Assembly: GCF_963853765.1 (NCBI RefSeq)
Contig: NC_088859.1
Location: forward strand, 19,840,001 to 19,904,000
Direction: 5' to 3'
Length of the DNA: 64,000 nt
From: Magallana gigas
Lineage: Eukaryota
Shown: positions 21,325 to 32,770 of the stretch, piece by piece
Layout of the letters: the number at the start of each line of letters is the position of its first letter
How positions within the stretch are numbered: the stretch's first letter is position 1
Notes under the pieces: model-generated
The model's database searches: none
Told to the model about the DNA's origin: nothing
What the model saw: only the letters and a program-made list of their open reading frames with translations
Made by a program: the position numbers and the translations under genes

Positions 21325-24300
21325 ACTAAAAATATTTTTTTTTTAGTTAATTACATTTCTCAACAAAATTTTGATATGGTTTTAATATAATACATGTATC
21401 AATGTCAAAATTTCTGAAATGCAACATTTTAGATTGAGAATTAATAAAACTTCATCGCCAAGAAATTTTCTGCCTCTACCATAATCATAGCTATCTCTAC
21501 TGAAATTCAGCTCCATGTAGTAAACATTGTTTTCCATTACTAGAATAGAATCCACCAACCTCAATGCGTAGGACTTCATTCTGTAGTCTCTGTTGGAATG
21601 TGAGAAATTCTTTGACAGTCAGTTTCTTTTTACCATCAGGGCCGAAAAAGAAGGTCAGGAGGGCGGAGCCAACACCCTTATTGACACTTCCTGTTGTACT
21701 ATGATCCTTGTGACGTTTCCCAATACTGGTCTGGTTCCTAATGATGGCATTAACCTATAGGGGAAAAGAACTGATAAGAAATTCTGACCAGAATAATCAA
21801 ATTATCTGATCGATACTTATGACAAACAATTTTTTACTGGCTTGAAATTCGACTCAGTTTTCAATTTCAATAAGCTGTTTCTATCTACAATAGACAATAA
21901 AGGAGGTTTTTATTTTTAAATCAGCATAATAATTTGTCTCGCCTTTTCAAACTCTTCAATGTCCACTTCCCCATCTCCATTGAAGTCAAACATCTTAAAC
22001 GCGATCTGGAAATTCCTTGGTGGTGCTGAAATCAGTTGAACAAATATGCAGTTTAGTATGGCTGATTTATGGTACACAAATACATACAATACGTGGAAAG
22101 AAAAACATTACTGGTATTTTACAATTGTTGGATTGAGTATTTACGATAATGTCTAACTGCATTACTTTTTTGTCAATTCAAATTAAGTCAACTATTCTTA
22201 CAAATCTTACTCAATAGTCATACAAATATTGTGATTTCACCCAGAGTTTTATTAAAACAATGCTATGGTTGATATACCTATACCTCCCCCCTAACCTCTT
22301 CATCTTAATGTTAACATAAAATGATGTTCTACATTTCTGCAGCTATATGTTTGATCAACTCCACCTCTCCAGCCCCTATTTTCTGAACCCCCCCCCCCCC
22401 CCCCCAACCCCCATCCCCACCCCACCAATCTTACTGTAAGGTTTGAATGGACTGCTTACTTGACAGGACTGTCAACAGGAAGATATAATCGGAGAATGAG
22501 ATGAGTCCACTCTCTCCCATCTGGTAGAAGATGCTGTCTTCTCCCAGGTTCCATTCCACTTTGCTATTCTATAAACCATGCAGAAAGAAGGAAAACAGTC
22601 TCAGATTACAATTCTTGTGAAAAAAAAATTCAATGATTGAGATGATGAATCAATACAGTTCAAAATTATTTCAAAATGAGTACAAAAGATGATTTTTTTC
22701 TTCAGTGTTGCTCAGTTCTAATTCAAAGACTTTTTAAAATAATTTCACAGGTACATTTATCACATTTTAGTATGTACGTTTATTGAATATGCAGTGCATT
22801 AGTTTGCATGATTGGTGGCATTTTTTATTTTATTTTACAAGCTGTGATGTAGTTCAATTATTAGCAATTAGACTTAATTAACCAACATTGACTTAAGTTT
22901 AACTTTTAACCATTGTAAATTCAAAGAAATAAACATAATACAATAAATTTACAACAGATGTACTGAACAATATGATTATTGAAACACAATATTCTTTACA
23001 ATTATTATTTGTGTAAATCATATAAAATAATTACAAATATTAAACATCTTAGACATGCAATCATTTATACACTCATATCAATGTGAGCAAACAAAATTTT
23101 TTAGTGTTGGTTTGTAAAATTTTCTTGCAACGGTTCATTCCAGAAAAAAAATTACATTAAATTCATTCCCTAGGTTTTTGTGAGAGCAATAAAGTTGGTG
23201 CCAATTTTCAATTCGCAAGACTTCCTCAATTAATTCAACACACAATAGGTTGGTAAGGCTGAATAAATTCTGCAGGCAATGGGGTGATAAAATGTAAAAA
23301 CCTTTTCTTCACAAATTAATTTTGCACTTAGATATTCATCTTTAAATTTATCAAGTATGTGTGTTTCATGCGGGTACATGTACAATTATGTATGAATTAA
23401 AATTTTTAAAAAAAACACGGCCAGAAAAAGCAGTTAGCATTGCAGCCATTATAACTTTTACCTTAGTTTGTAAGCACTAAAAATTCTTTATCTCGTAAAT
23501 GCCAGACAGTTTTGAATAAAAGATAAATGAAAAAATAAAAAAGAATTACGGTAAAGCTTAAATTTTAGAACCACAATGCCATGTAATGATGCATTGGTTT
23601 CTCTCAAACCAGTATGGTAAATGGTACATGGTAAATACAGTTTTACAAAAGTATAACCAATTGTAGTGTATCAAACTCTATGATGGTATTTGAACAGTTT
23701 ATGACAAAAAATCTTTGAGCTACAGCCATTTTATATCCTTTACACATGTACATTGTACATAATCTTAAGAAGTATGTTGTACCTGTTTTAAACTAAAAAA
23801 ATCTCATTTTGGGTAATACCCGGTAATTAAACCAATGTATATATATATAATGATTAATGAAACTCACACCAGACCAGAAATATTTGCACAAATATGAAAT
23901 ATTGCAAAATAAATTCAAAGGCAAAGCCAAACATTGCCTTGTGCCACGCATTACAAGAAACACTTCTTTGCAATCAGTAAGAAAATCCACACAGAAAAGT
24001 GGTTCTTTGCCAAGTAGATAAACTATATCCATAACGTGTTATAAATTATTGTTATACTTTTATGTTAAATACTGAAATCTGATTGGTTAAGACGCAGTTC
24101 ATAATTCTTTCTATTACCCTCAGCGTTAGCAACGCACTTAGCAACGGGTAACATTAAAAAATGTTACATGCGCGAAAATTATGCGCGTACGGTTCGCTGT
24201 AGAATTCACGTTATTCCTATATAAAAGAAGTGAAATTTTCTTAAAAATTAAGACATTCAGTATAACAAAATAAATAGTGCCTGTTTGGGAGGATAACAGT

Positions 24301-27300
24301 TGAAATTGACACCCCTCGAAAACCATCTTTAAAAACTTCGCGTCGGTTGACAATGGTTTTCTCGGGGTGTCAATTTCAACTGTTACCCTCCCAAACAGGC
24401 ACTATTTATATAATACTGTATTCCATAACAACTAGCTATTCAGATGTCAAAACTGGCACTGAATGTTTACAGATCAAGCCAGCCATGGGACACTAGTTAT
24501 ATAATGATACTCGGAGAATAAATGTATGGTTTAGCCATTAAACCCTAGCTTTCAATATGAATCCATTTTAGAACAGTGACTCAGATCTTTCATTCATTAA
24601 CATCAATGGGTTTTTTCCATGTAATTTTTGTATTCAAAGCCTCTATATCACAAATAATCACTTTCCAATGTAATACTGTAAGTTCCTTATTTTACGCAAG
24701 TACTCAATTCCGCTGTTTTGTATCAAACCGCAAGAATATAAAATCGCGATCACAAATTTTTGTTATTACACGTACTTCCTACAACCAATACATTGTATAT
24801 ATCTACATGTTATATAATCCTAACTATGTAATGGTACATCACAATATTGGAGAGATTTAATCTATACAACTGATGAATGATTATCGTTACTGACAATACA
24901 GGGTACTACTAGCTAACAAAATAGTACAATTATGTAAAGGAATATACATGTATATGAATTAACACAAATTGTTTACATGGAAATTTAAAATTAATTGACA
25001 TTGAATGACACAACTGAAATACAAATTTGAGTATACACACAGATATGCCAACAGCTACCAGTTGGCGAGGGCATTCATGAGCTAGTAGATCAGACTCGAT
25101 CAACTGAGAATAAATATATAGATAAGTATGACATCATTCTGAAGCAGGCCGAGCAATAACTCACCACCTTAAGCCGACACAGCCGTGGGACAGTTAAGAT
25201 TTTTTTCTTCTGTTGAATATGATTGGACAAAGGATGAGACATTTGACAAAAACAGATGACAAAATGGAAAACAACAATGCCTCCCCCCCCCCTGTCCCCA
25301 ACCCACATTATACACACCAATAACCAACACTGGAATTTTCAATCAAGTTCACAATGGATGCATTTAGAGAGTGTTAGAAGTGACAGCTATGCATTCAAAT
25401 GCCGTAATTGTTAGTTGATGATGAATGACAGTCAGAAACAGAGACAATACAACACAAAGGAGGAAGCCATGAATCTCGATTCAAAGTACACAGTACAGAG
25501 ATGACAAGAATATACCATAGACAAAAAATTAAGATATCTGAACATTCCATTTGGATAACAATATACATGTAATTACATGTAGTATATGTATTGTCCTTGA
25601 TAAAGATAGCTTGATGTTGACAAAACCAACAATTTATCATATGAATGTACAGTAAAACACGGTTATAACGAAGCACCAGGGACGGGCGCATTTGCTTCAT
25701 TATAAGCGTAATTCGTTATATCCGTCAAATTTACGACATGTAATATACCCGGGGAATGAAAATCACTTCGCTGTAAGCTTCAATTCATTATAAGCATGTT
25801 CGCTATAACCGTGTTTTACTGTATGTCTTTAAGAGGGATCGATGGTCTTGAGCATTTATAGGCTGTTTTGATCTCCTTTAAAAGAAGGAAATGCACAGAT
25901 TTAAAAGGTAAAATAAGGACTTTTTTTTTTACTAAATAATAGTTTATACATGATGATGAAGCTAAACAGATCATATCTTAAAATATAAGGAAGATCTGAT
26001 GGCTAATTTGTTGAACATCATATTTAATGTACATGAGGAATGTACATGTTCATGCATTACATTTATAGTAAAAAAAAAAAAATAATGTATTCTAAAACTT
26101 GTACATGAAATGAAAATGTTCAGCGTGTTTTTAAAGATATTTCTTTACTTGATAATCAAACTGTAATGAGGTTGTTACAGTTTTGACAGATGAACGTTTC
26201 AGTGTTAAAATGTGGATAAACTTGTTGCTTCAGTTTAATTAAGATGATCACCCACGTGTTCCCGGGTGTTCTGAGCCTACATAGTACATGAATGATGGAG
26301 AAAACTATCTCTCTGGATCATACATGGTCAAGAGCAAACTCCATAGGTTTGAGGAGATACCCATACATGTTTCTTAAATTACTTCACTTGAAGAACATTT
26401 GATATCCTGAATTGAAACAGGAAAAAAAAATTCAACATTGAAATCCAAAAAAAATCAATCGGTGTACACTGTTCAATGAAAAATATGAAAGCAGTAATAT
26501 TCACTTGCGTGTATACTGTTTACAGGTTTATTTTTGCCCCTGTGTTATTTTCACCCTTCAGCACTTGCAAAACAGCTTTGCCCTGTCTTGAATTTGCCCA
26601 GACACAGTTGTATTTTTAAGAGAGATATTGGAATTCGCCAACTGACAACAAGAGCGAATGGGGTGAAAATAAACGAGGGCAAATATTTCCCTAGTATATA
26701 TACATGTATACAGTCTGTGCATACCTAAAAAATTTCAGTTTGTGACACATTTTTGATTTGCTTAGATAGTTATTTACTATTAAAGTATGTAACATAAATT
26801 TCCATAAAAAAAAAAAAATTCAGAAAAATATAGATATCAATACCTATAATACAATTTAACATTATAGATATTAATTTGTCATATATGAACGTTGAAGAAC
26901 TGTCTGCATAAGTATTTAAAAGGTACACGTATTGGAATTAAAACTGTTAAATTTAGCCAAGCATTTAAGTAGTTTATGCATCAAATAAACAGGCCTATAT
27001 ATCTATTAGTTTAGAATAGCATTTATTAAAAACATCATTAACTGAATAATGAAGCATCAACTCATAAAGTTTAATAACGAATTCTGATTTTTAGTAAAAA
27101 AAAAAAAAAAAAAAAAACACCAAAAAGAAAAGATTTATATTTTTAAAATTGGAGAAGAAATTTTAACTTGCAAAAGCATGAAAAAAATTAGTAGAGATAA
27201 CAGTTAGTCAAAACACAGGGCAGATGTTTGATTCTGTTGTTAAACTTGTTTGTTTACTTCAAGGCCCACATCATTTCTTCAGTGATGAGAGGATTGCTTC

Positions 27301-30300
27301 TCTTTTACAAGTAAACATTTTTCGAGAAAATAAAGAAGCAAAATACTAGTATTCCAATTTTGTTTATAATAATCTATTGATTGGCCAAAAACTGTGATCA
27401 TTTTAAACAATGTTGCCTCTGAAACAATGAATAACACTAACTTAATTCAAAAATATATTTCAATCTAACATAGCTGTTAATACCATCTATATTTTAAGTC
27501 AAATTTTAAAAAGTTGAATGGCCTCATCTATTAAATCCTAATCCATGTAACACATGCTGTATCCATCTATATTTATCACTTTGGAGAGGTTTACATTGTA
27601 CGTCGCAGAAAGAAATGCTTTTTAGTTGAGAAAATTCACTCAAAAACCACCAAAAATGATTAAAGGTATTAACCTTCCTCAAGATATGCCCAAAATAGAA
27701 GGAAAATAATAATTGTAAACCAACTTTTATTTGTGTGCGAGAAAATACGCAACATCCTATTTGCCACTATTTTTTCCACTTTTATAATTTTAATAAATGT
27801 TCAGTTTATCACCTAAAACTCTCTTACTTTAAGCCAGTTTATCACTGTTAATTGCAAATTAAAGTTTGGGCAAAATAAAGATGGTTTACAATGACAGAGT
27901 GTTAAAAGAACCAGAAAATTTGCATCCTCAATTTAAATAACTCTAAATGTATATATTCTACATAAACTTCACAAGAGGTTTATGCAACGTACTACATGTA
28001 TATGTCCTATCAAACTTAAACCAAGAAAAAAATTCTTTGTATTTAATAAAAGGAAAAACATATACCAGTAAAAAAAAAATTAAAAGTGAAATCTCTAAGA
28101 GTGTGTACAGCAATATCTTAAAAGATAGAAGAATGATTGAAACATCTGCCCTCTTTGAATTTATTGTCAATATGCAAGAAAAAAAAAAGAACAAAGAAAT
28201 ACTGCTTGCGACTCACCAAGATTTGCTTAAAATCTCCCGTCTTTGCCAAGACAGACAGAACACATAAATACTTAGTACAATTCTAGATTGAATCATTGCG
28301 CTTATAATAATCGAAATACATTGACATGAATCACATCGACAAACGTAAACATGCATAAACAGATTCAGAGTTCTTGCATGAACATTCATTTCTACTTCAT
28401 TTTTTCTTTCGCTTTTTTTTTTTTTAATTGCGAGACATTTAACACAACAAGCTCAATACTGCAAAACTTGCTCACAAAACAGACTGAAAGTAAAACATAT
28501 GCAATATTCATGTTCCTCTTTTAAATGAGAAACAAAAATTTGCTAGCTTTATATGATGCATTATTAGTTTGCAGCAACTTTGCAGCAACATATGTTGTTC
28601 TGTCACCATTATGTGAACTGCCATGACAAAGCCTAATTCTACTAGAACTTTATTAGGTTGGATTTCTAAGTTAACAGTATTTAGTTTTTAAAAAACTTAA
28701 TTTATCTATTTTCTAAAGAAGACCAGTGCTTCAAGTTTTGAAATAATCCAAAAGGACATTCAATGTACTTCTATACAAATTGATTGTGTTGGTGATACAT
28801 TTGTGTTTCATCTAAGATTTTATGAAAGAAAATTTACTTTAGGGTTAATAATGAAAGGGTCTATTTTCAAAGCATTTTTTTTCTTAAAGAATAAATAAGT
28901 GGTACCAGATGTTTTTTTATTCATTAGCTAGTGCATTATATGTGCTGTACATGTATTATAATTTTAACAAAATGACAGCTAGCACGAGTACTTTCTATTT
29001 TACTTATTGTATCGTATAACGACAAATATATATAACATTATTAATTGTCAGAGTATTTTGGGTCCCTAACCCCAACCCCCTCCAAGAGAAGCACAACTTT
29101 ATTCTAGTGATTTAATTTTTATCACAGAAAAAGATGCAAGTAAGTGTATTTTCAAAAGAAAACAAATACTGTTGCCAAGGGTTAACAGTATTGCAAAAGT
29201 TGAGATTATAACTTTTGAGGGGTTGATTTAAAGAATAAACGATTACTTTGAACAGTGAAACTAGAATGTTAAAAATTGGTTCTATAATTAGAATAAAGTT
29301 GTGTATTGAAACACAAATGTTTTGACTTACCTGGGGGTCAAACTTAATAAACTTGTCCAAGTCAAGACCTTCAATGGAAAATGTTGGTATATAAAACAAA
29401 TAATATGCATTACAAATACACTTATAATAAAAGAATGAAGAATTTAGAAAAAATCAAATTCAAAGCTGGTAGACTAGTTTTGAAGATGATTTACTTCACA
29501 TATATATATATCAAATATACTTATTAAGGCCAATATAATGGAACTACCGGTTCATGTACATGTACCGGTAAATTCAAAATTAGACTCTTTTCCGATATCC
29601 GAATACAGAGCTCTTCACCTAAAAGAAGGTTAATATTGTCTAATGAGGGTCACAACCCCATCCAGCCCTCTTAAAAGCATTCTAATTCATAAAACTGACC
29701 CTCTGGTTGCTTCATCCCCGGAGTGATGGAGCGAACAAAGTCCTCGGGAGTCATGTACACCTCCCATGAACCAGAACCTTTCTCGTCACCGCTATGAACT
29801 TTCAACGTGGCAAAATAGCGAAAAATCTTGTCAGGCGTAGAATAGGCCCGGATTCTGTTCTCATATTCTATGATCTGAAAAATGAACATGAAATTAAGTT
29901 AAATATTCATGACCTTATTGTTAGGAATGGCTGAGTTCCAGAAAGGTTTTCAATTTTAAAACAGCAAATAATGAAAGTCTTTAAAAAGATTTTTCGTAGT
30001 GATGTGAAATAACAGTGCATTTTGTGTTTTCTGTTATTTTCAATTCTTGATGGTTTATGAACAGGTAGAAATAGAATTAAATACAAATAAAATAACCACC
30101 ATCTCTATGTAAATAATTCTGAATTGAATTAATAATAAATCGCATGCATTTTTTTTATCTTTCATATGTTTTAAAAATGAAGTACATGTACTGCAAATGC
30201 ACTAAAATCTACTGTGAACATTCTAACAATCCTAGTCAGTAGGCCACGTCCATATGGGTGATAAATTAAAACAGGAAATTAAATTACATAAGTTAAAATC

Positions 30301-32770
30301 TTTTGATACAGCTAAGAAAGTGTGAATATAAAACAGGATGAAATCTTAATTTTTATGCATAATTAGACAAAAGTAAAAAAACCCCTTATTTTGATGGTCC
30401 ATGTGTAACTACATATATATAGTATACATTCACAAATTAATTGCTTACTGTATACAAGTAACCATTCGCCACTGTTTTATTTTCTCCCCTTTGCCCTCAT
30501 TATCAGCGGGCCAATTTAATACTGGGCAAATTCCAATGTCTCAAATAATCTCTTATAACACAACTTTGTCGGGACAAATTCAAGACTGGGTGAAACCGTT
30601 TGCAAGTGAAAAGGGCGAAAATAACACTGGGGCGAAAATAACCCTGTATACAGTAGTAGAATTATTCTTACTCTCTTTTCCCTGAAGCCAATTTTCTTCT
30701 TCTGGACCTTATTTTCTTCACTTTCCTCGGACTCCTCCTCGGCTCCCTTAACCGCTTCAGGCTCCTCAGCTTTCACACTACGTGAAACATTGTCAGTGTT
30801 TAAACTTTAAAAGGCAGTAAAATACTACAGAGATTTGAAATAGAGTCTTTGTAATTTTTTAAGCTTTAAGAGGTCTGGATGGTTGTGGCCATTTTTAGAC
30901 TATTTAGATCTTCTAAGAAGAAGAGCTTTGCACAAAGATTTCATAAAATATTCAAAAATCAAAGATTCAATTTATGATTTTTTATCTTTATTAAAAAGAT
31001 AGTTTATTATAGCTTTAAAAATCATATCTACAAATTGTAAGAAGATATATATGGCTTATATGTTGACCCCCAAGCCTATTTAAGGTCAAGATCTAGTCAA
31101 TGATTTCAGAGCGTCTTTTTGGTGCTAGAACCATAATGACGTCATAATTGATTTGAAGAATTTTTTCCCGTACTTTACGGCTTTATAAGAATTACGTAGA
31201 AAATTAAAGAATTTCTTGACATTCTATGTTAAATCATGGGAAAAGTAATCCCGATACCTATATTCAATTTGACATCATTCTAGAGAGGAGGTCAAGAGCT
31301 TGTTTATTTCCGTTTTGGGGGAGACTGTAGGCATTCTACGTATATTTTATTAGTCAAAAACGGACAAAACTCCAAACTTTTTCTTCAATTCCTTCATATT
31401 TCATTGAAAATGACAGTTTACAACATGATTTTTTCATTATGTTTACCAAATATTTTAGCCCCGGTACACCCTATCAAACAAAGCTATTGTTATGAAGCAT
31501 CATTGAAAGAATTTGTATCTTAAATTTTATGAACCTGTAGGCACCTTTCATTTACTAAATCTTGACCTTAAAGGGACGACGAAAAAAATATCCCAGGATT
31601 TGAAAATATAGAGATTGAAATACATGTACTTCAAGAAACAGTTGTTAGGAATTCTGAGTTTAACATATTCATTAAATAATAAAAAATATTGATGTTCGCG
31701 ATTGATATCAAAGTTCAACTGTATGTTTTATTGTGTTCCCTACACTTCTTCTGGCTCCTAAGCTACATGCATTATGTTTGGAAATACTATTGTGTCAAGA
31801 TAATCATTTTGTAGATATTTACAACCTGACTATTTAAAGAGATGCTTATGTAAATAAGATTCTGGCTTAATTCTTCAGATAGCAGAAATTGTATTGTTAC
31901 TGGTGAGATGGAATTTAGCAGAGCAAATCTTGTTCACTTCAAGTTTATTCAGTGCCGGTACATGGCTATTTACAGTGAAACACGGTTATAGAAAAGACTC
32001 GATCTTATAATGAATTGACACTTGCTGCGAAGTGATTTCATTCCCTGTGACTTAATTGCATGTTGTAAACTTGACCGTTATAACAAATAACGCTTATAAC
32101 GAAGCAAGATTGCAAGTCCCTGGCACTTTGTAATAAGCGTGTTTTAATGTAAATGCAAAAATTGAAAATTGTGGACTAAATTTGATCATTGAAAGATTTA
32201 CTCCTTCTGGTTTAAGTTACCTCTTGTCATCACCAGAATCAAATGGCCCAAAGTCAAAAAAGATTCTAAAAAAGAAGACAGGAAAGATTCAATAATCATT
32301 GTACATGTCTAAACAAAGTAAATATCTTTTTAATATCTTTGTATCAAAATGATGCAAAAAGTGTCTGCAGGTAATAGCAAAATTCATCACAATTTCCATC
32401 ATGCATCCAACATTGTACTTACTACTACATGTAATTAAGTAAACAACAGATCTCAAACTTACTTGAAACCCGATCCCAACATGATCATACACATCACAAC
32501 TAAATAAGCAGATGTCTTGTAATTAGTTTGAAGTGTTTTGGGGAGCCCCGAGTATCCTGCCCCTCTCCTGATAAACAGTCTGGGACTGGTCTTGTAAAAC
32601 CGAGCTGGCTGTAGACACAGGATTGGTAAGGGAGGGGGAGCACTGATCTCGGACAGACATGGTCTCCTTTGTATACTTTGCCTGCACATGATTGGCTGGG
32701 AGACTCTACAGGATGGGATCAAAGTCCTGCTTATCCCTGCAGCACTCGAAATTTTGGATGCTCTGAACAT
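18997..32770 (-). CDS. MICU1: Mitochondrial calcium uptake protein 1 (EF-hand), 519 aa from 12 core exons
   Basis: Exons 32770-32463, 32265-32221, 30777-30672, 29874-29700, 29368-29331, 22568-22460, 22025-21943, 21754-21560, 20637-20488, 19892-19784, 19407-19318, 19148-18997. Hallmarks [110 protein letters not shown]. Confidence 0.97.
20078..20450. mobile_element. Non-autonomous element with imperfect TIRs and an internal tRNA-like segment
   Basis: Ends taagggggctcactacacc / ggtgtaatgaggtatctta. Minus strand at ~20290-20340 reads tcgtagctcagtggttaaagtatcggacttgtgaacc. Confidence 0.5.
20830..21332 (-). mobile_element. Short Helentron-associated non-autonomous element (HINE, CvA/pearl-like) in a MICU1 intron
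   Basis: Ends aaaacaagaggcccaggggccacattgctcacct and hairpin agctcacttgagcc-ttc-ggctcaggtgaact; short microsatellite and one decayed Cg170-like unit inside. Confidence 0.75.
24020..24415. repeat. Interspersed repeat ending in a long hairpin
   Basis: Arms 24271-24326 and 24353-24408 (~56 bp, near perfect) around a 26-nt loop. Confidence 0.7.
25648..25823. mobile_element. Tc1/mariner-like MITE (TA..TA)
   Basis: TIRs tacagtaaaacacggttata / tataaccgtgttttactgta; a second copy lies at 31971-32151. Confidence 0.75.
26514..26714. mobile_element. ~200-bp MITE
   Basis: Ends tactgtttacaggttatttttgcc / ggcaaatatttccctagtata..tacagt; inverted relative at 30446-30655. Confidence 0.65.
30446..30655. mobile_element. 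~210-bp MITE, same family as 26514-26714
   Basis: TIRs tactgtatacaagtaaccattcgcc / ggcgaaaataaccctgtatacagta. Confidence 0.7.
31084..31567. mobile_element. TTAA-flanked MITE (Kolobok/piggyBac-like)
   Basis: TTAA|ggtcaagatctagtcaatga ... tcatttactaaatcttgacc|TTAA. Confidence 0.7.
31971..32151. mobile_element. Second copy of the 25648-25823 MITE
   Basis: Ends tacagtgaaacacggttatag / taataagcgtgttttaatgta; internal similarity to the first copy. Confidence 0.65.

What the first reader, a model, noticed from the sequence alone, without database searches (positions are those of the whole stretch)
22569..29330. Cluster of frame-preserving micro-exon candidates in MICU1 at the vertebrate MICU1.1 position
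Seen: the 6.8-kb phase-0 intron between KFDPQ and NSKVEW is by far the longest in the coding region. It contains AG..GT-bounded, stop-free segments that are multiples of 3: 28240-28217 (TGDFKQIL, donor GTGAGT, UGCAUG ~110 nt upstream), 26406-26383 (DIKCSSSE, strong pyrimidine tract), 26160-26149 (FDYQ, GTAAAG), 25329-25318 (CWLL, UGC motifs upstream), plus two 45-nt exons listed separately. Knowledge: vertebrate MICU1 inserts the micro-exon EFWQ (MICU1.1) at the equivalent loop after KRFDGK, raising Ca2+ sensitivity in muscle. Inference: oysters may tune mitochondrial Ca2+ gating with a larger combinatorial micro-exon set at this loop. Some candidates could be chance matches in an intron this long.
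Basis: partly seen in the sequence, partly recalled or inferred. Interest (0 to 1): 0.72.

Follow-up and report, generated by a model that had tools for sequence, protein, structure and literature searches.

The report
Oyster MICU1 alternative micro-exon cluster
The long intron of the oyster mitochondrial calcium-gatekeeper gene MICU1 holds three real, conserved, optional mini-exons at the spot where vertebrates insert their muscle/brain micro-exon.

Summary
The coordinates, flanking exons (KFDPQ | NSKVEW), phase 0 and the four named segments are all as described. The selection rule has no power, though: AG..GT, in frame, stop-free gives 152 segments in the intron against 150±13 in shuffles.

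Public protein isoforms of this oyster differ only at this junction. They define three cassette exons:
- A: 28240-28217, TGDFKQIL
- B: 25209-25165, [15 protein letters not shown]
- C: 23476-23462, CLQTK

Together with one unexplained island D, these are the only collinear conserved islands when the intron is compared with Ostrea and Saccostrea. Spliced cDNA contigs from related oysters carry A or B.

[12 protein letters not shown] and CWLL are in no isoform and are not conserved. Reads cross the first two unspliced, and a variant in one RNA run destroys the FDYQ acceptor.

Scallops, mussels and clams have matching cassettes at the same site, and crabs have a 12-nt one.

The isoforms are already in RefSeq, but I found no paper on them in the library searched.

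New here: a 13-nt element after exon A is exactly complementary to island D, 0.4-2.5 kb downstream, which carries two ACUAAY motifs. This may be an RNA bridge.

The scan had not found this before on other DNA.

The parts
29331..29368 (-). Constitutive exon 4 (38 nt, ..[12 protein letters not shown]), donor CAG|GTAAGT
   Evidence: The exon3-exon4 joint is seen in 3/14/3 reads of three RNA runs and in one contig. cDNA mapping.
22569..29330 (-). Phase-0 intron of 6762 nt that hosts the cassette exons. It corresponds to human intron 5 (after FDGK).
28217..28240 (-).
   Evidence: Present in isoforms P0269, P0274, P0275 and P0276. Present in spliced cDNA contigs L004-L006 of a related oyster. Conserved with its flanks in Ostrea and Saccostrea as SEDFKQIL.
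28241..28297 (-). Conserved upstream flank of exon A: GTACTAAGTAT (branch-point-like), then the UCUGUCUGUCUU tract and AAG
28140..28216 (-). Conserved downstream flank of exon A: donor GTGAGT, box 1 TTGCATATTGAC (28177-28166), box 2 AGGGCAGATGTTT (28152-28140)
27142..27229 (-). Island D, a near-invariant intronic element that is not an annotated exon. It contains box 2' AAACATCTGCCCT (27229-27217, the exact complement of box 2), ACUAAC (27208-27203), ACUAAU (27192-27187), a pyrimidine tract and AG (27168-27167).
25165..25209 (-). Cassette micro-exon B, 45 nt, [15 protein letters not shown] (real; basic, one Cys)
   Evidence: Present in isoforms P0270, P0277, P0296 and P0276. Present in spliced cDNA contig L003 of a related oyster. 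Conserved with its flanks 25248-25127. Four synonymous codon changes against each other genus.
23462..23476 (-).
   Evidence: Present in isoforms P0272, P0273 and P0275. Ostrea has CRQNK in an annotated isoform. Saccostrea has CLQSK in the genome with AG/GT kept. Flanks 23499-23419 are conserved.
23367..23371 (-). GCAUG 91 nt downstream of exon C. A GCAUGAAACA-type element lies 61-91 nt downstream in all three oysters.
22460..22568 (-). Constitutive exon 5 (NSKVEW..TVLS)
26383..26406 (-). Rejected candidate DIKCSSSE. It has the best acceptor in the intron but a weak donor, GTAATT.
   Evidence: In no isoform and in no conserved island. A contig and reads run through it unspliced, and a donor +4 variant is seen in 24/24 reads of run X22.
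26149..26160 (-). Rejected candidate FDYQ
   Evidence: In no isoform and not conserved. The acceptor is AG>AA in 12/12 reads of run X22, and reads are contiguous across it.
25318..25329 (-). Rejected candidate CWLL
   Evidence: In no isoform. It lies outside the conserved island of exon B. It ranks 31 of 172 by a crude splice score.

Best explanation
The 6.8-kb intron of oyster MICU1 contains three genuine cassette micro-exons: A (24 nt), B (45 nt) and C (15 nt). They are included independently and add 8, 15 and/or 5 residues between ..KFDPQ and NSKVEW... By alignment this is the site where vertebrate MICU1.1 to MICU1.3 insert EFWQ and a 2-residue exon.

Shown: the exons exist, they are alternatively included in annotated and assembled transcripts, and they have been kept with their flanking intron sequence across oyster genera.

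Inferred: as in vertebrates, the inserts change the linker that precedes the first EF-hand lobe. That would tune the Ca2+ threshold or cooperativity of uniporter gating, or the contacts of MICU1 with its partners. Exon A is acidic and aromatic (DFKQ, compare vertebrate DFWQ/EFWQ). Exon B is strongly basic.

The other named segments ([16 protein letters not shown]) are chance AG..GT matches.
For: - Isoforms: public isoforms of this species differ only at this junction. They carry no insert, A, B, C, A+B or A+C, and each peptide maps to a single AG/GT-bounded segment of the intron.
- DNA conservation: blastn of the intron against the orthologous introns of Ostrea edulis (22 kb) and Saccostrea echinata (5.3 kb) finds only four collinear islands, A, D, B and C. 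Everything else is unalignable (alignments).
- Coding constraint: exon B shows four synonymous third-position changes against each genus.
- Transcripts: spliced cDNA contigs from public RNA runs of related oysters join exon 4 to A to exon 5 (L004-L006) and exon 4 to B to exon 5 (L003).
- Other bivalves: scallops have three cassettes at the same site with all 8 combinations annotated, and mussels have three. Heterodont clams have two.
- Other animals: crabs have a 12-nt SAEE exon at this site, and vertebrate hits carry DFWQ or DFWQTE.
- Function in vertebrates: in human, exons 5' and 5'' give four variants with different effects on mitochondrial Ca2+ uptake (PMC8909990).
Against: - The one reads call on this species did not list a joint to A or B. 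However, 74 joints and 911 loose ends were hidden behind repeat-derived rows, and exon C and exon 5 lay outside the 6-kb stretch.
- Evidence for C rests on RefSeq models in two species plus conservation. No assembled cDNA with C was seen.
- Nothing here tests tissue specificity or an effect on Ca2+.
- The AlphaFold model is of low confidence in this region (pLDDT below 50 for residues 202-252), so the structural role is not resolved.
Confidence: 0.88

Rival explanations
1. All the reader's candidates, including [12 protein letters not shown] and CWLL, are real but rare or tissue-restricted micro-exons, so the set is larger than three.
For: DIKCSSSE has the best-scoring acceptor in the intron. 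The block around DIKCSSSE and FDYQ is transcribed in sense at a notable level. Rare isoforms can be missing from annotation.
Against: - None is in any of about 30 oyster isoforms or transcript-derived proteins.
- None lies in a conserved island.
- A 384-nt contig and the reads cross both DIKCSSSE and FDYQ without splicing.
- In run X22 the FDYQ acceptor is AA in 12/12 reads and the DIKCSSSE donor is changed at +4 in 24/24 reads.
- The selection rule yields as many hits as shuffled sequence does.
Confidence: 0.05
2. Inclusion of A, B and C is splicing noise or an over-prediction by annotation pipelines, and has no function.
For: RefSeq isoforms are model-based. Inclusion levels in this species were not measured here.
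Against: - The exons and 40-80 nt of flanking intron are the only parts of a 5-22 kb intron kept across three genera.
- Exon B shows a synonymous substitution pattern.
- Independent cDNA assemblies carry A and B.
- The same three-cassette layout is found in scallops and mussels.
Confidence: 0.04
3. Island D is itself an unannotated exon (a poison or non-coding exon, or the 3' splice site of one) rather than a regulatory element.
For: - D ends in a perfect branch-point sequence, a long pyrimidine tract and AG.
- In all three species an AG..GT span of 66 nt can be drawn around it. This is my reading of the alignment.
Against: - The putative donors are poor (GTT in all three).
- The frame differs between species, and each frame has stops.
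- Sequence after the AG is not conserved.
- Read depth there is low, 1-2x against about 13-33x in exon 3.
- No isoform shows it.
Confidence: 0.12

Closest known systems
Vertebrate MICU1.1 / MICU1.2 / MICU1.3 (exon 5' EFWQ, 12 nt, and exon 5'', 6 nt; PMC8909990, and PMC13281805 for zebrafish)
   Same: - In-frame cassette micro-exons at the same aligned position, after FDGK in vertebrates and FDPQ in oysters, ahead of the first EF-hand lobe.
- Combinatorial use of more than one cassette.
- Exon A shares a D-F-x-Q core with DFWQ/EFWQ.
- A GCAUG element lies near one cassette. Vertebrate exon 5' is driven by RBFOX2.
   Different: - Three cassettes of 24, 45 and 15 nt instead of 12 and 6 nt.
- A basic 15-residue exon and a Cys-containing 5-residue exon have no vertebrate counterpart.
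- Homology of exon A with EFWQ is not established.
- Tissue pattern and effect on Ca2+ are unknown in oysters.
RefSeq and UniProt predicted isoforms of Magallana (Crassostrea) gigas calcium uptake protein 1 (XP_011445734/35/36, XP_019928067/68, XP_034312768, A0A8W8IDS9), as named
   Same: These records already contain exons A, B and C in the combinations reported here.
   Different: They are unannotated predictions. No paper in the library searched describes them, links them to MICU1.1 or shows their conservation.
Long-range RNA 'bridges' that bring distal splicing-factor sites to a regulated exon, and STAR/QKI-type ACUAAY response elements (both from my own knowledge of the splicing literature, not read here)
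   Same: - A conserved 13-bp complement links the flank of exon A to a distal island that carries two ACUAAY motifs.
- With the stem formed, UACUAAC sits about 65-88 nt from the exon A donor. In scallops it sits at +77 without any stem.
   Different: There is no covariation, because both arms are invariant. No binding or splicing data exist. The pairing is found only in oysters.

Membership tests
MICU1 orthologue | Full-length similarity to solved MICU1, including the EF-hand lobes and the N-terminal polybasic stretch | tested here: met
   E 3.5e-139 to human MICU1 chains over residues 139-537. The KKKIGFR motif and the EF-hand Pfam families are present.
MICU1.1-type cassette micro-exon | Lies in the intron that splits the FDGK/FDPQ | K.. 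junction ahead of the first EF-hand lobe | tested here: met
   Alignments. The inserts sit exactly between KFDPQ and NSKVEW.
MICU1.1-type cassette micro-exon | At most 51 nt, a multiple of 3, with AG/GT borders | tested here: met
   A is 24 nt, B 45 nt and C 15 nt. The three rejected candidates also meet this, which is why the feature alone is not diagnostic.
MICU1.1-type cassette micro-exon | Transcripts exist both with and without the exon | tested here: met
   A and B are in spliced cDNA contigs of related oysters. A, B and C are in isoform models of this species. This is not met for [12 protein letters not shown] or CWLL.
MICU1.1-type cassette micro-exon | Exon and flanking intron conserved between species | tested here: met
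   for A, B and C. This is not met for [12 protein letters not shown] or CWLL.
MICU1.1-type cassette micro-exon | Sequence homology with EFWQ | tested here: inconclusive
   Only a D-F-x-Q core is shared, which is too short to test.
MICU1.1-type cassette micro-exon | Muscle/brain-specific inclusion and a changed Ca2+ sensitivity of the uniporter | not testable with these tools
RNA-bridge or long-range-structure-regulated exon | Conserved complementary boxes, more than chance would give | tested here: met
   A 13-nt exact complement in all three oysters. None of 1000 shuffles reached 13 nt. Duplex energy is -34 to -38 kcal/mol against -15 to -22 for shuffles.
RNA-bridge or long-range-structure-regulated exon | Compensatory changes that keep the pairing | tested here: inconclusive
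   Both arms are invariant in the three genera. No counterpart exists in scallops or mussel.

The most novel reading that the evidence does not exclude
There are two parts.

(1) The micro-exon module at this MICU1 intron is ancient. Molluscs share a K-D-x-[FL]-x-x-L type exon A and a basic exon B. Crustaceans and vertebrates have micro-exons at the same site. MICU1.1-like tuning would then predate vertebrates.

(2) In oysters, where insertions moved the downstream regulatory element 0.4-2.5 kb away, a conserved 13-bp RNA stem (box 2 with box 2') bridges it back. This would place a double ACUAAY site (QKI/HOW/SF1-type, also a perfect branch point) about 70 nt from the exon A donor to control inclusion.
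Probability: 0.3. Interest if true: 0.65.

Novelty: new member of a known kind. Interest (0 to 1): 0.45.

Why it matters
MICU1 sets the Ca2+ threshold of the mitochondrial uniporter. The vertebrate micro-exon variant MICU1.1 is the textbook case of tissue-specific tuning of that threshold.

A richer three-cassette version at the same site, conserved across bivalves and paralleled in crustaceans, suggests that this linker is an old and general adjustment point rather than a vertebrate muscle novelty.

It also supplies natural variants for structure-function work: acidic/aromatic, basic and Cys-containing inserts. Oysters face large swings in oxygen, temperature and Ca2+ load, so isoform switching could be physiologically relevant.

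The candidate RNA bridge is a compact, testable example of long-range intron structure in a lophotrochozoan.

Tried and rejected
- **Reads.** I laid three raw poly(A) RNA runs and one contig set on 23899-29898, within the 6,000-letter limit. The exon 3-4 joint served as a positive control. Repeat-derived rows filled the tables, with 74 joints and 911 loose ends not shown, so inclusion of A and B in this species could not be read off. Exon C and exon 5 were outside the stretch.
- **Exon-based library search.** It gave no own-species protein, only the route to homologues.
- **Fragment search for short transcript-derived proteins with B or C.** No oyster hits.
- **Rfam on the whole intron at E ≤ 1.** Nothing, so island D is not a known RNA family.
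- **Search for an equivalent complementary pair after exon A in scallops and mussel.** Only AT-rich chance matches.
- **Oyster islands blasted against scallop and mussel introns.** No significant hits.
- **Crude splice-site scoring.** It ranks the false DIKCSSSE first and misses exon C, so it does not discriminate.
- **AlphaFold model of the A+B isoform.** Low confidence at the insert, so no fold search was made.
- **Earlier scan notes.** Nothing on MICU1 apart from this same finding.
Full report
**1. Observation**

The window carries MICU1 on the minus strand. A full-length isoform matches human MICU1 chains at E 3.5e-139.
- Exon 4 (29368-29331) ends ...KFDPQ with donor CAG|GTAAGT.
- Exon 5 starts at 22568 with NSKVEW.
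- The intron between them is 6762 nt and phase 0.
- Mapping of cDNA contigs gives the other coding introns as roughly 167-1446 nt, so this intron is by far the longest.

**2. Chance**

- It finds 152 segments of 9-51 nt in the intron.
- Dinucleotide shuffles give 150±13, and the opposite strand gives 145.

The rule therefore carries no information by itself. A crude splice-site score ranks DIKCSSSE 1st, the 45-nt segment 25209-25165 2nd, TGDFKQIL 3rd, FDYQ 13th and CWLL 31st of 172.

**3. What the isoforms say**

A search from a bivalve homologue reached the cluster of Crassostrea/Magallana gigas 'calcium uptake protein 1' isoforms. Aligned, they are identical except between KFDPQ and NSKVEW, apart from alternative N-termini in a few UniProt and Logan entries and scattered single-residue differences.

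| Insert | Isoform ids |
|---|---|
| none | P0196 |
| TGDFKQIL | P0269, P0274 |
| [15 protein letters not shown] | P0270, P0277, P0296 |
| CLQTK | P0272, P0273 |
| TGDFKQIL + CLQTK | P0275 |
| TGDFKQIL + [15 protein letters not shown] | P0276 |

Each peptide maps once in the intron:
- A: 28240-28217
- B: 25209-25165
- C: 23476-23462, with borders ..tttttag|TGC..AAG|gtaaaag

Ostrea edulis and two Saccostrea species have the same pattern: SEDFKQIL, R/KK.ILSVPRLC.LKV and CRQNK.

**4. DNA conservation**

I fetched the orthologous loci of O. edulis (intron 22 kb) and S. echinata (intron 5.3 kb).

blastn of the oyster intron against them gives only four collinear islands:
- 28297-28140, around A
- 27229-27142, island D
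- 25248-25127, around B
- 23499-23419, around C

Two other hits are transposon-like and non-collinear.

In the alignments the AG and GT of A, B and C are invariant, and 40-80 nt of flank is kept. Exon B shows four synonymous third-position codon changes against each other genus. In Saccostrea, exon C is present in the genome as CLQSK although it is not annotated there.

**5. Transcript evidence**

Proteins predicted from assemblies of public RNA runs include forms with A (P0308, P0232, P0353, P0355, P0356; Saccostrea P0292) and with B (P0361).

Their contigs are uninterrupted cDNAs of 2.1-2.6 kb. Their exons are roughly 84-98% identical to the window, so they come from related oysters. They map as exon 4 to A to exon 5 (L004-L006, three runs) and exon 4 to B to exon 5 (L003).

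**6. Reads of this species**

I laid three stranded poly(A) RNA runs and one contig set on 23899-29898.
- The exon 3-exon 4 joint appears with 3, 14 and 3 reads plus a contig.
- No joint to a cassette is among the 15 rows shown, but 74 more joints and 911 loose ends were hidden, mostly behind repeat pile-ups. This is therefore no evidence of absence.
- A single-copy block, 26034-26420, is covered contiguously by one 384-nt contig. It is also covered by sense-strand reads at a depth close to that of the exons.
- Those reads cross the DIKCSSSE and FDYQ borders unspliced.
- In run X22 the FDYQ acceptor reads AA instead of AG in 12 of 12 reads. The DIKCSSSE donor is changed at +4 in 24 of 24 reads.

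**7. Rejected candidates**

[12 protein letters not shown] and CWLL are in none of the roughly 30 oyster isoforms or transcript-derived proteins examined and lie in no conserved island. For the first two, the read and variant evidence above also counts against them. They are best read as chance matches.

**8. Wider distribution (database isoforms)**

| Group | Cassettes at this site |
|---|---|
| Scallops (Pecten, Mizuhopecten) | KDDVHSL, a 14-residue exon, and GSK; all eight combinations annotated |
| Mussels | KDDFR(T/K)L, MSKMKK, and DPRV (EPKV in another Logan-derived relative) |
| Heterodont clams | KDNLKAL, KESVAEL or DNLNDL, plus a basic 4-mer (KQRL, KKAR or KRQM) |
| Gastropods | KDSFKDL, KDSLDDL, KESLKDL |
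| Crabs | a 12-nt SAEE exon |
| Vertebrate hits | DFWQ and DFWQTE |

Exon A thus belongs to a mollusc-wide exon family of K-D/E-x-[FLIV]-x-x-L type. A second, basic cassette is also widespread.

**9. Protein context and likely mechanism**

In human MICU1 the insert follows residue 181. Exons 5' and 5'' give four variants. Those with exon 5' raise MCU activation and resist MICU2 gatekeeping. The region is unresolved in crystal structures (PMC8909990). In zebrafish, two micu1 micro-exons depend on srrm3 (PMC13281805).

The oyster inserts sit at the aligned position. An AlphaFold model of the A+B isoform is of low confidence there (pLDDT below 50 for residues 202-252). It suggests only a short helix over DFKQILKKK.

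My inference is that the cassettes alter the length and charge of the linker before the first EF-hand lobe, and thereby the Ca2+ threshold or partner contacts. That inference is not tested here.

**10. Regulatory elements**

Island D is the most conserved part of the intron and is not in any isoform.
- Its first 13 nt (AAACATCTGCCCT, 27229-27217) are the exact complement of box 2 (AGGGCAGATGTTT, 28152-28140). Box 2 lies 55-78 nt after the exon A donor.
- Each motif occurs once per intron in all three oysters. The two are 442, 925 and 2475 nt apart.
- None of 1000 shuffles of the 365 nt of conserved intronic islands gives a 13-nt complement; the maximum was 12.
- Duplex energies are -34 to -38 kcal/mol, against -15 to -22 for shuffles.
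- D then carries ACUAAC and ACUAAU 16 nt apart, a pyrimidine tract and an AG.
- Scallops have ACUAAU at +38 and UACUAAC at +77 directly after exon A'. The mussel has UACUAAC at +20.
- With the stem formed, the oyster UACUAAC would lie about 65-88 nt from the exon A donor. That estimate is my calculation from the positions.

I propose, with odds of about 0.3, an RNA bridge that keeps an ancestral downstream element near exon A. That element could be a branch-point/SF1 site or a STAR/QKI-type site. There is no covariation, because everything is invariant, and no counterpart pairing exists in scallop or mussel.

Exon C has a GCAUGAAACA-type element 61-91 nt downstream in all three oysters, which is compatible with Rbfox-type activation.

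**11. Novelty**

The isoforms are already in RefSeq and UniProt. No paper in the library searched describes MICU1 splicing in oysters or other invertebrates.

I file this as a new member of a known kind, MICU1.1-type cassette micro-exons. Two unproven extensions go with it: deep conservation of the module, and the candidate RNA bridge.

**12. Limits**

Inclusion levels, tissue pattern and function in this oyster were not measured. Exon C lacks assembled-cDNA support. The homology of exon A with EFWQ and the role of island D remain hypotheses.

Noticed in passing
window 27142-27229 with 28140-28152: Island D is near-invariant and its first 13 nt are the exact reverse complement of a conserved box 65-77 nt after the exon A donor, in three oyster genera. 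D also holds two ACUAAY motifs, a pyrimidine tract and an AG. It is in no isoform and matches no Rfam family.
   Followed up: yes
window 26034-26420 (minus strand): This single-copy block is covered by one contiguous contig (depth 123, against 20-43 for neighbouring intron contigs and 250 for the exon contig). It is also covered by sense-only reads at about exon depth. It is not conserved in Ostrea or Saccostrea. It begins near the strong acceptor at 26406, and reading from exon 4 would give ..[15 protein letters not shown]-stop. It may be an alternative terminal exon or an independent transcript, and it remains unexplained.
   Followed up: partly
window 24047-24414: A foldback, MITE-like element has 57-nt arms that are 95% complementary (24270-24326 and 24353-24409). 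RNA depth is very high on both strands (up to about 880x), with many loose ends, so it belongs to a multi-copy transcribed repeat. A copy lies in the Saccostrea intron at a non-collinear place.
   Followed up: partly
window 25621-25850: A second inverted-repeat element (52-nt arms, 75% complementary) shows read pile-ups on both strands and loose ends at 25823/25824. It is probably another transposon fragment.
   Followed up: no
window 29142-29368: One RNA contig (449 nt, depth 250) joins exon 3 to exon 4 and then runs on unspliced for about 190 nt into the long intron. This is retention or pre-mRNA at the exon 4 donor.
   Followed up: no
window 32226-32267: MICU1 has a further small constitutive exon of about 42 nt between exon 1 and the acidic exon, seen in the cDNA mapping.
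   Followed up: no
L007 8344-9000 and L008 7249-7891: In scallops the A' and B' cassettes lie only 412-433 nt apart inside one 650-nt block that is 82% conserved. RefSeq lists all eight combinations of three cassettes (21, 42 and 9 nt).
   Followed up: partly
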